Positions 20,204 to 62,015 are shown, counted from the stretch's first letter. The stretch: 64,000 nt of DNA from Aplysia californica (GCF_000002075.1 NW_004797276.1:2177950-2241949); one strand, 5' to 3'. Made by a program: numbers and translations. The notes: generated from the sequence alone by a model not told the origin.

Positions 20204-20569
20204 TACTTATATGGTGACAAATCCCTGTTCAACGATGATGGATGGCCTTGTTTGTTGTCTCTGTTTTTTCCACTTTGGTTTCTATTTTTAATATAAGGTA
20301 GGGTCTGCCCTTCGTCCTTTCAGATAAACTCAAGGTCCAGTGTGCATGTTGCACGATCCAAGATTATCTGGATAGCGCAGGCCTGATTTGAAATTATCAT
20401 TTAAGGACAACAACAAAATTGTGACTTTGTCAAAGTGAAATTATAGAAAAGTGAATGAGAATGGTTTTTGCTCTGTAATAATCAGCTTTACTTCATTTCC
20501 TCCAGGACATGGAAATATTTTAGGCTTTAATAACTAATTTTTTTTCTCCAGGCTACAAAGACCAGCAAC

Positions 20570-21338
20570 ATGAATGGTGAATCAGCTAACAAGTTCATCT
20601 CTGCTTTGGTGAAGTCACTTCAGACTCTGTGCCAGGGTTATGTGGAGTTCAATGATGGGATAGAAATAATCGGACATTTATACCTGAACATTGATAGTGG
20701 GTCTAGTTTTGACTACATAGTGAAAGAAAAGGTTTGCAAAAATGCTGAAAATTCCACTATATTTGTGAGCAAAAGTTATGCTGCTCAGACACCACCTGAT
20801 GAAGTGATAACTCGGAGAGATAAAGGTCAGTCAATGGGCAATGACCAAGGAGCAGACTTTGAGGATGCATCGATGTCTCCTACCGCAGGCACATCTCGGT
20901 TGCAATCAGCTATCACAAGCATCAGCAATGTTTTGTCTGGGGCCCAGGATAATCAGAAGTCTCGCCATATGTCCCTAGACCACTCCCACCTTCCATCAGC
21001 ACATTCTATTAAGAGAAAAAGAGAGCACAATGGTAATTATAGCGGAATGCATCCTCCATACAAGTACACCACTCTACAATCTTCATCATCATCTTCAGCC
21101 TATTTCAACAGTGCACCATCAAAACAAGCAGCAGACAGAAACCATTCTGAACAATTCAGCAGTTCATCCCATGCTGAGTTTTTCGGTGGTGACAGCAACC
21201 AAAGCTCAGGTATGGGCCCTGATGATGAGGATGATCTAGACTTAGATGTGACTTTTGTGAAAGAAGAATATTCAGAAAGTCAAAGAATCTCCAATCAAAG
21301 GGGGGTTTCAGCTGGTGCTGCTTCCAGACTCAGTCAAG
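20570..21338 (+). CDS. Gene B constant coding exon 1: unnamed N-terminal domain plus Ser-rich linker
   Basis: Acceptor tttttctccag| (exon starts 20552), CAGCAAC-ATG at 20570, 256 open codons, donor CAA G|gtagtt at 21338 (phase 1). N-terminus is homologous to gene A. Confidence 0.9.
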
Positions 21339-22469
21339 GTAGTTTTTCTGTTTGAAACTACTTTTTTTAACAACTTTATTTATTGACTAAGTGTGTGTAA
21401 AGTATTTTAATTTACTTATCATTGATTTTGGGATGGGGCTTATCTTTTCCTTAAAAGAAGAAGAAAAAAATGAGTTTCAACTTTTCGGATGTCAAAAGTA
21501 CAGTAATTACCATTTCGCGTAAGCTTCTTTCTTTTCTTGTGTTGAAAACAAAATTGAGGTCTTCTGTTCTTTCCTTATTTTTTTTCTTTTTGATGAGCTT
21601 GCAAAGTTGCACCACTGAAAGTTATTTTTAATGATGGGTGTGAGTAGTTTTCAGCAAATTTAGTCAGTTGACATAGTCCTGTTATGGGTTGGCATGCTAC
21701 TGTTACACTTAAAGAGCAGTTTGTAGCATGCTCAGGTGTTTTTAAAGGTGACTTCAAATTCTTATTTACATTGCATTATTTTCAAGTAGTGTCATGCTCT
21801 TCCCCAGATACTCAAATGACCTGCTTTTTTGTTAATCTACATCAAAGTTAGCACACTTTGGTCATAAGTTTGTCATGAAAATTTAGATTGGCCCAATACC
21901 TTTTTTTTTTTTACAGAATCGAATTGAAGTTTCAGTGTTTTTTGAGAGGGGAACAAAATTGAGAGAACTGCTGACCCACCATCACTTAACTCACATGAGA
22001 TGTGCTGCCTCATACTGACAATTTCACACCATCAATAACTATGTGTTTGAAATTACCACTTTGGTTAAAGACTTATACTGGTATTAATTAAGTATTCCAT
22101 CTGTTTGTGAACTTTTTGTCATGTTTCTATTGCTGATAATGATTTTGATGCTACTCTGACTGTTAGTTTCTTTACATGATACAGTCCTATGGATTCCTTT
22201 AGGGAAAAATGTGACTTGATCTTAATCTGAATTAATCGGTAAGAAATTATGCTATTATAATAGCCTTTTTTTTCTTTCACATTTTCTTTATGTAATGTTT
22301 TAGAATTTTTCCAGCTCTCTGACTCCTGTCATCAAGTTGTTATGGTTAGAGAAACTTGAAATGTAAATTTAGATAATTAAGTAGTTTGATGTGAATTAAA
22401 AAAATTGTAACTCCTTTGCCAGTGTCCCAAATCCATATGTGACAAAAAAATGTTACTTCAAATTCACAG

Positions 22470-22670
22470 ATCCTTCTTCTAGTCAGTCTAATCTTCATGA
22501 CAATTCTTCAGTGGGTGGAGGCTCAATTGGTTATCCAAATTCTGATGCTCCACCCCAGCAATTTACTAGTGGAACAGCTGGAGATCTAGGGGCTCTGAGT
22601 CAGTCTTTTCAAGATCCTTCTCAACTGGACATGGGTCAGCATCATATTCAAGGACCACCAAATCCACGAA
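22470..22670 (+). CDS. Gene B constant coding exon 2 (S/G/Q/P-rich, 67 codons)
   Basis: Acceptor ttcacag|AT (phase 1, in frame with exon 1), reads DPSSSQSNLHD...QGPPNPR, strong donor CGA A|gtaagt (phase 1). Confidence 0.85.
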
Positions 22671-59793: not shown

Positions 59794-59900
59794 ATGATAG
59801 AACTGCTTCCTGGTTCAGGCGTGTTTATTCATCAGGAGAACTACAACGTGGTCATGTCCAAGACGAGGCAAGACCGGCCGGATGGAAAGGCCATGGCAAG
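59794..59900 (+). CDS. Gene B module V4 (BEN domain) exon b
   Basis: ttgtccccag|ATG ATA GAA CTG CTT CCT GGT TCA GGC GTG TTT ATT (IELLPGSGVFI, typical of the segment before BEN domains) ... KAMA AG|gtctgt (phase 2). Confidence 0.75.
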
Positions 59901-61902
59901 GTCTGTGCTTTGGGGTGAAATAGAGGGACTTTCATTTCTGCCTCATTTTGTTATGCGTGTTCCTGCTCTTTGGTTTTATCTGAAGACTGGTCATTATTTT
60001 TATTTTATTTTGTGTCTCACAATTCTGGTGTACTGGTGAAAGTACACAATTCGGTGGCGTTTATGATATTGTATTCGGCTTCATTCGGCTTTCCCCAGTC
60101 CGAGAGTACGTTTCACTCGAATAAGCGGCTATGGCGGCAGGCGAAACTAGGTGTAATACTGAAACTCCATCGGGTGAATCAAAATTTAAAAACACAGTGT
60201 TGCCATACAAATTAAATCGATATTCTTACTGATGTCACTATAATGACCAAAAAAAAAAAGAAGGAAGAAAAAGAAAACAAGTGTCCTCCGATTTCTAGAT
60301 TGTCTGGCTCGTCATTGAACCTGTGAGAGTTAATGAGTATGGCATGAGTAAGGAACCGTCCGTTGGTTGTTGGGGAAGGCCTAATCAAAGTTTATTCAAA
60401 GTAGGCGTGTTGCAGGGCTTCGGATTTGAGGGGAGGTGTTTGACGCAATAAAGTCTACGGCAGCAGGAAAAGGCCGCAGTGCAAGAAACTGATGCTAAAT
60501 TAAGAACGATAAGTGGAAGTGGTTTTGACATTTGACAATCGAGTGCGTAAAGGAGGGAACATTAGAGAACTGGCTTGATGATTGTATCTTCAAGGTTGGT
60601 GTTCCCAGATTTGTCAGTGATGACAAATTGAATAGTGGCAATGAGGAAATGCCTTTTTCAACCCTCGGAAAGCTCTATGTTGGATGCCTATATGGATCAT
60701 GATGGCTTGTTGCTGATTAAAAACTGGTACTGTGATTTAGCATTTTGAAAAAAAATCAATACTTAGTCCATGATGCAGTGATTCACTGATTGCCAGCATC
60801 ACTACATCCCATGCTCTCACAGTCTTTCCAGCTCCGGCTCTCAGTACACACTCTCTTTTATTTTCCCTTTTTGCTCTGCCGTGAGCCTGACTATAAAGGT
60901 TTTATAAATAAGTTTTGTCTTGCATGCTTTTTAAAATCCGTGATTACTGAAACCAAACATGGTTTTGGCAGTTGGTGTTCTTCTTGCCTCTCCTAAGGCC
61001 CAGATCAGGATTAGTTTTTTATTTTTAGGGTAAAACTAGTTAAAATTAATTGTTTTGTCATACCTAAGTCACGAAGGACTTATCAGTGTCCTATACTAGT
61101 GTCGGGAAATATGTTTTAATATAGTTTGTATTTGTATGGGCTAGGGGTTTTGAAGTTAATTTGGCTGTCATCCTGCACTCAATTCCAGATTCAATACTGA
61201 ATGATAAGTGCCTTGGACGATAGTCCATAAATGCTTTTAAAAAAAAAAAGCTCGCCTCATTTCATACACACTTCATCTTAACTTGTGCATACCCAAACAC
61301 CCCCTTCCCCTCCCCACATATATAAACATACGCGAGAACATGCCCACGTGTACACACAGACACACACATACATGTGCATGCACAAATAGTTTTCAAAATA
61401 TAAGTACCCAATATCCCGGACAGCAATCGCGTTCGACGAGGCAACGATTATCTTTTTTTCTCTTCTTTGTTTTTGTACTACCTGATTTTGGGCCAAATTA
61501 CCTGAAAATGACCCTGAATCTACCTGAAATGGGAACTTTAAGGTAGGCAGCCTTACATATGAGACACTGTACTTTGAGAAGTCAGCCAAGTGCTCTTGGA
61601 TTCTACTTTCTTGTTGTCTTTAGAGAATATCAAATGATCAGTTTTGTGGGGGGGGGATTCAGAATGTGATTGACTGTGATTTATGGTTCTCTGTTTTTAC
61701 GTACAATCTGCCAATTATTTTTCAAATACAAAGGGGAAAGGAGATTTGATAGGAGAGTTGTTTAAATTTCCCCATGAAACGGAGTTGCAATGACTTAAAA
61801 CAATTTTTGGATTTTTGGTGTGTGTGCGTGTTGGCAGGGTTACATTGAGTTGAGTTCTTTTTTAAAATATGTCCTAGTTCTGTTATTGCCTTGTCTTTCC
61901 AG

Positions 61903-62015
61903 GTACCTCATGTCATGTTTCTGGAGACAAAGTGAATTAGTGGGTGCCAGTATTGCAGAGCCTCCCAAGCCTCATCAGAAATCACTGGATAGGGGCATTG
62001 TGCACGCTATTTTAG
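61903..62015 (+). CDS. Gene B module V4 (BEN domain) exon c; domain continues downstream
   Basis: ttgtctttccag|G completes the Arg codon: MARYLMSCFWRQSELVGASIAEPPKPHQKSLDRGIVHAIL fits the BEN consensus (AR-xL-xxFF-xxEL-xxxS...LD-xxxx-AI). Donor G|gtgag. Confidence 0.75.

What the first reader, a model, noticed from the sequence alone, without database searches (positions are those of the whole stretch)
20552..62015. mod(mdg4)/lola-like locus built on an apparently non-BTB domain: one constant N-terminus, at least four swappable DNA-binding C-termini
Seen in sequence: the constant region (~323 aa) ends at 22670 in a phase-1 donor. Four downstream modules each open with a polypyrimidine/AG acceptor in phase 1 (29330, 29906, 45839, 58329). 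None has an evident start exon of its own. Three end in stops, so they cannot be concatenated and must be mutually exclusive. They encode three unrelated folds: C2H2 pair (twice), DUF3504/Crypton and BEN. Established knowledge: Drosophila mod(mdg4), lola, broad, fruitless and tramtrack join a constant BTB exon set to alternative terminal DNA-binding exons, and mod(mdg4) includes a BEN isoform. Inference: this is an independent, probably lophotrochozoan, transcription-factor diversification system in which a single interaction domain is retargeted by 3' exon choice.
Basis: partly seen in the sequence, partly recalled or inferred. Interest (0 to 1): 0.95.

Follow-up and report, generated by a model that had tools for sequence, protein, structure and literature searches.

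The report
Snail transcription factors with swappable tails
In the sea hare and other snails, an undescribed family of genes splices one shared, unnamed front end to any one of several different DNA-binding tails, a design known from fruit-fly BTB genes but apparently evolved a second time from unrelated parts.

Summary
Confirmed and larger than reported. The gene is Aplysia californica LOC101859451. A constant region ending in a phase-1 donor (22670) precedes four phase-1 terminal modules: two C2H2 pairs, a Crypton/QRICH1-like recombinase remnant and a BEN-like domain. RefSeq isoforms join it to the Crypton and BEN modules, and RNA contigs of three runs branch at 22670. The two C2H2 junctions were not seen in Aplysia. 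Module order and acceptors are conserved in seven orthologous loci, six of which carry a fifth, psq-like HTH module. The ~75-aa N-terminal domain has no Pfam or PDB match and models as helix plus three strands, not BTB. It marks a family (seven Aplysia loci; all named hits gastropods) in which the layout recurs: a paralog 200 kb away has 18 RefSeq tails mapped; other species add FLYWCH, homeodomain, Nrf1 and piggyBac-finger tails. New here: a 15-bp RNA stem, kept in 8 of 8 loci, covering the second C2H2 acceptor, and, in Babylonia, 13 alternative exons for the BEN recognition helix. Works like mod(mdg4)/lola; not a member. Oligomerisation and DNA binding are untested; no paper found. The scan's other notes on it are from this same window.

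The parts
20553..21338 (+). First coding exon of the constant region (ATG 20570); three in-frame alternative donors at 21032, 21209, 21338
   Evidence: RNA contig joints to 22470 with GT..AG ends; RefSeq X1-X3 use 21209 and 21032
20570..20800 (+). Unnamed ~75-aa N-terminal domain (helix + three strands) that marks the family
22470..22670 (+). Last constant exon; phase-1 donor shared by all tails
   Evidence: RNA contigs end at 22670 in three runs; donor conserved in 8 loci
26892..26991 (.). Assembly gap, intronic; lies where other heterobranchs carry a psq-like HTH terminal exon that was not found in Aplysia
   Evidence: not filled
29330..29688 (+). V1: terminal exon, two C2H2 fingers
   Evidence: Pfam; Candidula model P0006 joins its orthologue to the constant region; acceptor conserved
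29718..29750 (+). 5' arm of a conserved RNA stem, downstream of the V1 stop
29872..29905 (+). 3' arm of the stem = pyrimidine tract and acceptor of V2
29906..30186 (+). V2: terminal exon, two C2H2 fingers, tandem paralog of V1 (about 50% identical in the fingers)
   Evidence: 69-78% identical in 7 orthologous loci; junction not seen in any transcript model
45839..47668 (+). V3: two exons (45839-46015, 46890-47668), Crypton/DUF3504-like tyrosine-recombinase remnant
   Evidence: RefSeq X3 XP_035824961.1; model matches QRICH1 Z 12.7 and Cre Z 10.4 over residues 1-105; Pfam QRICH1 and DUF3504 only weak
57485..57809 (.). Assembly gap, intronic, between V3 and V4
   Evidence: not filled
58329..62015 (+). 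V4: BEN-like module, exons 58329-58420, 59794-59900, 61903-62015; last exon with the predicted recognition helix lies 0.9-1.75 kb beyond the window end
   Evidence: RefSeq X1, X2; best PDB sequence hits NAC1 BEN E 0.035 and 0.039, 4ix7 E 0.38
1491..2016 (-). First coding exon of a head-to-head paralog (LOC101859211) with the same N-terminal domain; its C2H2 tails lie outside the window

Best explanation
One promoter makes a pre-mRNA with a constant head (the unnamed domain plus a low-complexity linker of three possible lengths) followed by a row of alternative terminal modules, all entered in the donor's phase. Each mRNA splices the 22670 donor to one acceptor and ends after that module, so one head is delivered to different DNA sites or chromatin partners. 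Shown: exon anatomy, phase matching, annotated isoforms for V3 and V4, a branch point at 22670 in RNA, conservation of order, recurrence in paralogs, tail domain types. Inferred: cis-splicing with alternative polyadenylation (all tails lie downstream on the same strand); the conserved stem hides the V2 acceptor and so tunes V1/V2 choice; the head is a dimerising or co-factor-binding module whose exposed strand and helix let isoforms combine, as BTB does; new tails are gained by tandem duplication and by capture of transposon or transcription-factor exons. The system arose independently of arthropod BTB genes.
For: RefSeq X1/X2 (BEN) and X3 (Crypton) share the head to the donor. Constant-exon contigs end at 22670 in runs X4, X8, X10, intron depth is at most 4 against 75-267, and leftover depth implies onward contigs at 77-91% of exon depth. 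Same order in 7 loci of 6 species. Paralog LOC101845285: 18 RefSeq tails each map to a separate phase-1 exon; the window's minus-strand paralog uses phase 0 and its three C2H2 tails have phase-0 acceptors. Identical heads with FLYWCH, homeodomain, Nrf1, piggyBac-finger, psq-like and BEN tails in Babylonia, Haliotis, Patella, Biomphalaria, Pomacea. The domain is single in all 326 proteins and starts within 25 residues of the N-terminus in 317.
Against: No read across a 22670-to-tail junction was seen: the single read-laying run could not hold donor and acceptor within 6,000 letters, and repeats crowded out the loose-end table. V1 and V2 are in no Aplysia protein model found. RefSeq isoforms are automatic models. 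The three runs are only guessed to be RNA. No test of oligomerisation or DNA binding. The stem shows no compensatory changes (0 of 21 pairs). BEN and DUF3504 are below Pfam cut-offs.
Confidence: 0.82

Rival explanations
1. The tails are separate small genes or relics, and the joined isoforms are annotation chimeras.
For: Some one-isoform gene callers list V1+V2, V3 or V4 as separate genes in Elysia, Plakobranchus and Biomphalaria.
Against: The same junctions appear in independently annotated genomes; acceptor position and phase are conserved; RNA contigs branch at the donor; phase tracks each paralog's own donor.
Confidence: 0.04
2. Joining is by trans-splicing from tail-specific promoters, as in mod(mdg4).
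For: The fly systems with this layout use it (PMC6237743, PMC13490949 abstracts); arrays up to 60 kb long make far tails hard to reach in cis.
Against: All tails mapped lie downstream on the head's strand; no conserved element after the constant donor beyond the splice site itself.
Confidence: 0.1
3. Splicing is as described, but the head is not a self-association module: it binds a co-factor, and some tails (V3) act as co-regulators, not DNA readers.
For: The closest structure to V3 is QRICH1 in a complex titled 'Zincore binding to ZFP91 on DNA'; the head has no structural relative with a known function (best Z 5.6).
Against: A lone helix on a three-stranded sheet with invariant hydrophobic residues looks like half of an oligomer (inference); this rival does not exclude the main reading.
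Confidence: 0.3
4. The head is a very diverged BTB/TTK domain, so this is homology, not convergence.
For: RefSeq names many isoforms 'zinc finger and BTB domain-containing protein-like'.
Against: No BTB hit among 91 members in Pfam or by profile in the PDB; fold is one helix plus three strands, 75 aa; no BTB among listed fold matches; TTK motif not found in Mollusca (PMC11426971). The names differ between isoforms with the same head, so they come from the fingers.
Confidence: 0.03

Closest known systems
Drosophila mod(mdg4) and lola (TTK-type BTB factors; also broad, fruitless, tramtrack)
   Same: Constant N-terminal region plus many alternative C-terminal DNA-binding modules: at least 30 mod(mdg4) isoforms, mostly FLYWCH, and 20 lola isoforms, 17 with C2H2 (PMC11426971). 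Tail types overlap: C2H2 pairs, FLYWCH, psq-like HTH, BEN.
   Different: Head is not BTB; family is found in gastropods whereas TTK-BTB is arthropod-specific; no sign of trans-splicing; adds Crypton, homeodomain, Nrf1 and piggyBac-finger tails and a second tier of choice inside BEN.
Domesticated Crypton (DUF3504) genes: KCTD1, KIAA1958, QRICH1, ZMYM2-4, WOC
   Same: Recombinase-derived domain without an intact catalytic set; KIAA1958 also has two alternative DUF3504 exons (PMC3212892).
   Different: Here it is one optional tail among unrelated folds; no link to the known domestication events was tested.
RNA pairings in 3' variable regions (Drosophila PGRP-LC, CG42235, pip; PMC6191721)
   Same: Conserved complementary elements near alternative 3' cassettes.
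   Different: Only one stem was found, covering an acceptor; no competing docking/selector set; no covariation.
BEN-domain factors NACC1/2 and Insensitive
   Same: Best PDB sequence matches of V4; NACC1 and Insv bind DNA through helix 5 (PMC8887127).
   Different: In Babylonia and Biomphalaria the exon for the last helices is itself alternative; NACC proteins carry a BTB head.

Membership tests
TTK-type BTB factors (mod(mdg4)/lola) | N-terminal BTB domain with ttk motif | tested here: not met
TTK-type BTB factors (mod(mdg4)/lola) | Constant exons joined to alternative terminal DNA-binding exons | tested here: met
   (junctions from database models, not from reads)
TTK-type BTB factors (mod(mdg4)/lola) | Trans-splicing; tails on both strands or with own promoters | tested here: inconclusive
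   All mapped tails on one strand; no allele-level data
TTK-type BTB factors (mod(mdg4)/lola) | Head forms dimers or hexamers | not testable with these tools
   Only single-chain prediction available
Crypton-derived DUF3504 (module V3) | Tyrosine-recombinase fold | tested here: met
   QRICH1 Z 12.7, rmsd 2.7, 100 aligned; Cre Z 10.4, for residues 1-105 only; the C-terminal half is low confidence
Crypton-derived DUF3504 (module V3) | Pfam DUF3504 above cut-off | tested here: not met
   12.7 bits against 29.7; QRICH1 and DUF3504 hits are weak but in the expected order
Crypton-derived DUF3504 (module V3) | Catalytic R-H-R-Y tetrad lost; single copy; conserved | tested here: inconclusive
   One match in the genome, about 61% identical in orthologues; no H-x-x-R motif by eye, but no alignment to an active Crypton was made
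BEN domain (module V4) | Sequence match to BEN domains | tested here: inconclusive
   Three of five PDB hits are BEN structures, best E 0.035; Pfam BEN E 0.14 for one orthologue; UniRef names two orthologues BEN
C2H2 zinc finger (V1, V2) | Two C-x2-C...H-x3/4-H fingers | tested here: met

The most novel reading that the evidence does not exclude
Gastropods independently evolved the counterpart of the arthropod TTK-BTB system: a clustered gene family with a new oligomerising head fold that combines, by terminal-exon choice, with dozens of captured DNA-binding domains per locus, with nested choice of the BEN recognition helix and RNA-structure control of acceptors, giving hundreds of transcription-factor specificities now hidden under 'uncharacterized' or wrong ZBTB names.
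Probability: 0.55. Interest if true: 0.9.

Novelty: new variant of a known kind. Interest (0 to 1): 0.82.

Why it matters
It is a clear candidate for convergent evolution of a whole gene-regulatory design, so far treated as an arthropod speciality. It adds an unnamed domain and probably hundreds of zinc-finger and other factor isoforms to snails, including Aplysia (a neuroscience model) and Biomphalaria. Gene-level counts and one-isoform annotations miss them, and RefSeq mislabels many as ZBTB. The conserved stem and the BEN helix switch give small, direct tests of how tail choice and DNA specificity are set.

Tried and rejected
Head domain: Pfam, PDB sequence, Foldseek, VIA-align and Atlas gave nothing outside molluscan clusters; pilin and PAS matches (Z up to 5.6) are background. 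Mini-exon 36904-36948: rejected as unsupported. psq-like exon in Aplysia: not found by tblastn, blastn or genome search; lost or in the gap, which I left alone. Extra BEN last exons in Aplysia: none. Conserved donor-side intron motif like mod(mdg4) TSA: none. Rfam: none. Covariation in the stem: none. Papers: nine searches run, including locus identifiers, found no description; the library lacks most subscription journals. The third homology search was dominated by the full-length first row and did not widen the taxon range. One search tried to join exons inside a script, against the operators' exon-by-exon rule; it crashed with no result and was replaced.

Full report
Identity. The window lies on a 3,590,776-base contig, and proteins identical to its exons are annotated on a contig of that length as Aplysia californica LOC101859451, isoforms X1-X3. 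Both N gaps are intronic and were left unfilled.

Observation. The coding constant region is 20570-21338 plus 22470-22670, 970 nt, ending in a phase-1 donor. Four modules follow, each behind a phase-1 acceptor: V1 and V2 (two C2H2 fingers each), V3 (two exons) and V4 (four exons, the last just past the window). RefSeq X3 is head plus V3; X1 and X2 are head plus V4. In three runs guessed to be RNA, contigs cover the two constant exons, join three phase-1 donors (21032, 21209, 21338) to 22470, and stop at 22670, while the intron is nearly empty. A contig stops where paths fork; leftover depth in that bin fits onward contigs at 77-91% of exon depth. This points to at least two continuations but does not name them. 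The junction letters were not displayed, and the call could not be repeated.

Conservation. Seven orthologous loci (Candidula twice, two Elysia, Plakobranchus, Bulinus, Biomphalaria) show the order head, psq-like HTH, V1, V2, V3, V4 as far as each locus reaches, with acceptors at matching places and phase; one Candidula copy lacks the HTH exon. Database models join the head to V1 (Candidula), V3 (Candidula, Biomphalaria), V4 (Biomphalaria, Elysia) and the HTH exon (five genera). No model with V2 was found, but V2 is 69-78% identical across loci. The HTH exon was not found in Aplysia; the first gap sits where it would be.

The head. About 75 residues are conserved, nine invariant in 91 sequences. 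There is no Pfam or PDB sequence match. AlphaFold2 gives one helix (3-24) and three strands, mean pLDDT 82; fold searches give only background or molluscan clusters. It is not BTB. A profile finds 415 cluster representatives; only the best 150 were visible, and all named hits are gastropods, from limpets and abalones to whelks and pulmonates. Aplysia has seven copies, four within 220 kb on this contig; several Patella members share one chromosome.

The layout is a family trait. The paralog LOC101845285 has about 30 C2H2 exon-like frames downstream on its strand; 18 RefSeq isoforms each map to a different exon, 17 of them C2H2, all in phase 1. The paralog at window 2016 uses phase 0, and so do its three C2H2 tails. 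Elsewhere identical heads carry FLYWCH, homeodomain, Nrf1, piggyBac-type finger and HTH tails. Patella LOC126816302 has 15 C2H2 tails seen here; RefSeq isoform numbers reach X34 in Pomacea and X37 in Physella.

Tails. V3 models onto QRICH1 and Cre in its first 105 residues, consistent with a domesticated Crypton (PMC3212892); it is single copy. V4's best PDB sequence matches are BEN structures. In the Babylonia gene with the same BEN module, 13 isoforms share it up to the point of Aplysia's 62015 donor and then differ. By alignment to NAC1 that part holds the last helix, which NACC1 and Insensitive use to read DNA (PMC8887127). Biomphalaria has two such exons, Aplysia one. That the switch changes DNA specificity is inference.

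A conserved stem. A segment 30 nt after the V1 stop is complementary to the V2 pyrimidine tract and acceptor. The Aplysia region folds at z = -3.2. A 15-bp core is kept in 8 of 8 loci while the loop diverges, and the two arms are the only non-coding, non-homopolymer 11-mers shared by all eight loci between the donor and V3. There is no covariation, so pairing is likely but unproven.

How it probably works. One transcript, one donor, one acceptor chosen per molecule, ending at that module's poly(A) site; the stem lowers V2 use; donor choice sets linker length. The head supplies a common interaction surface and the tail supplies the target. The splicing part is well supported; the protein-level part is inferred by analogy with BTB factors.

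Comparison and verdict. It works like mod(mdg4) and lola (PMC11426971) but fails their defining test, the BTB domain, and shows no sign of trans-splicing. TTK-BTB was not found in molluscs in that paper. I found no description of this family in the open library. New variant of a known kind, most likely convergent; interest 0.82.

Noticed in passing
G000:C6 about 2339000-2399800, minus strand (L016-L022): Paralog LOC101845285: about 30 tandem C2H2 terminal exons in two sequence classes plus one basic, non-finger tail.
   Followed up: yes
G000:C6:2315280-2315519, minus strand (L004, L014): Fourth cluster member, facing the studied gene tail to tail; its tails are not C2H2 and were not identified.
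   Followed up: partly
G000:C41:1578577-1578780, C89:1065727-1065963, C420:249320-249559: Three more head-domain loci, the C41 one divergent (E 2e-9); the C89 gene has RefSeq isoforms with different finger tails.
   Followed up: partly
window 29874-29883: A short CATAAA-like motif, kept in all eight loci in the stem's internal loop; could be the V2 branch region or a weak poly(A) signal for V1.
   Followed up: partly
L036:15760-15930, L037:15982-16130, L038:17787-17945: In the three sacoglossan loci the V1 frame stops after its first finger; V2 is intact.
   Followed up: no
L035 and L041: Candidula has two copies of the gene; one lacks the psq-like exon.
   Followed up: partly
window 6207-6638, minus strand: Fragment resembling an LTR-retrotransposon integrase zinc-binding region (by eye).
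   Followed up: no
window 41846-42127 (minus) and 62090-62317 (plus): Short frames resembling the ends of LINE reverse transcriptases (by eye), intronic.
   Followed up: no
window 19626-19684: Very abundant short repeat in RNA data; similar copies near 44600 and 57180.
   Followed up: no
L042:1-17213: Unnamed assembly with a divergent head-domain gene between a DUF3504 frame and a piggyBac-finger frame on the same strand.
   Followed up: no
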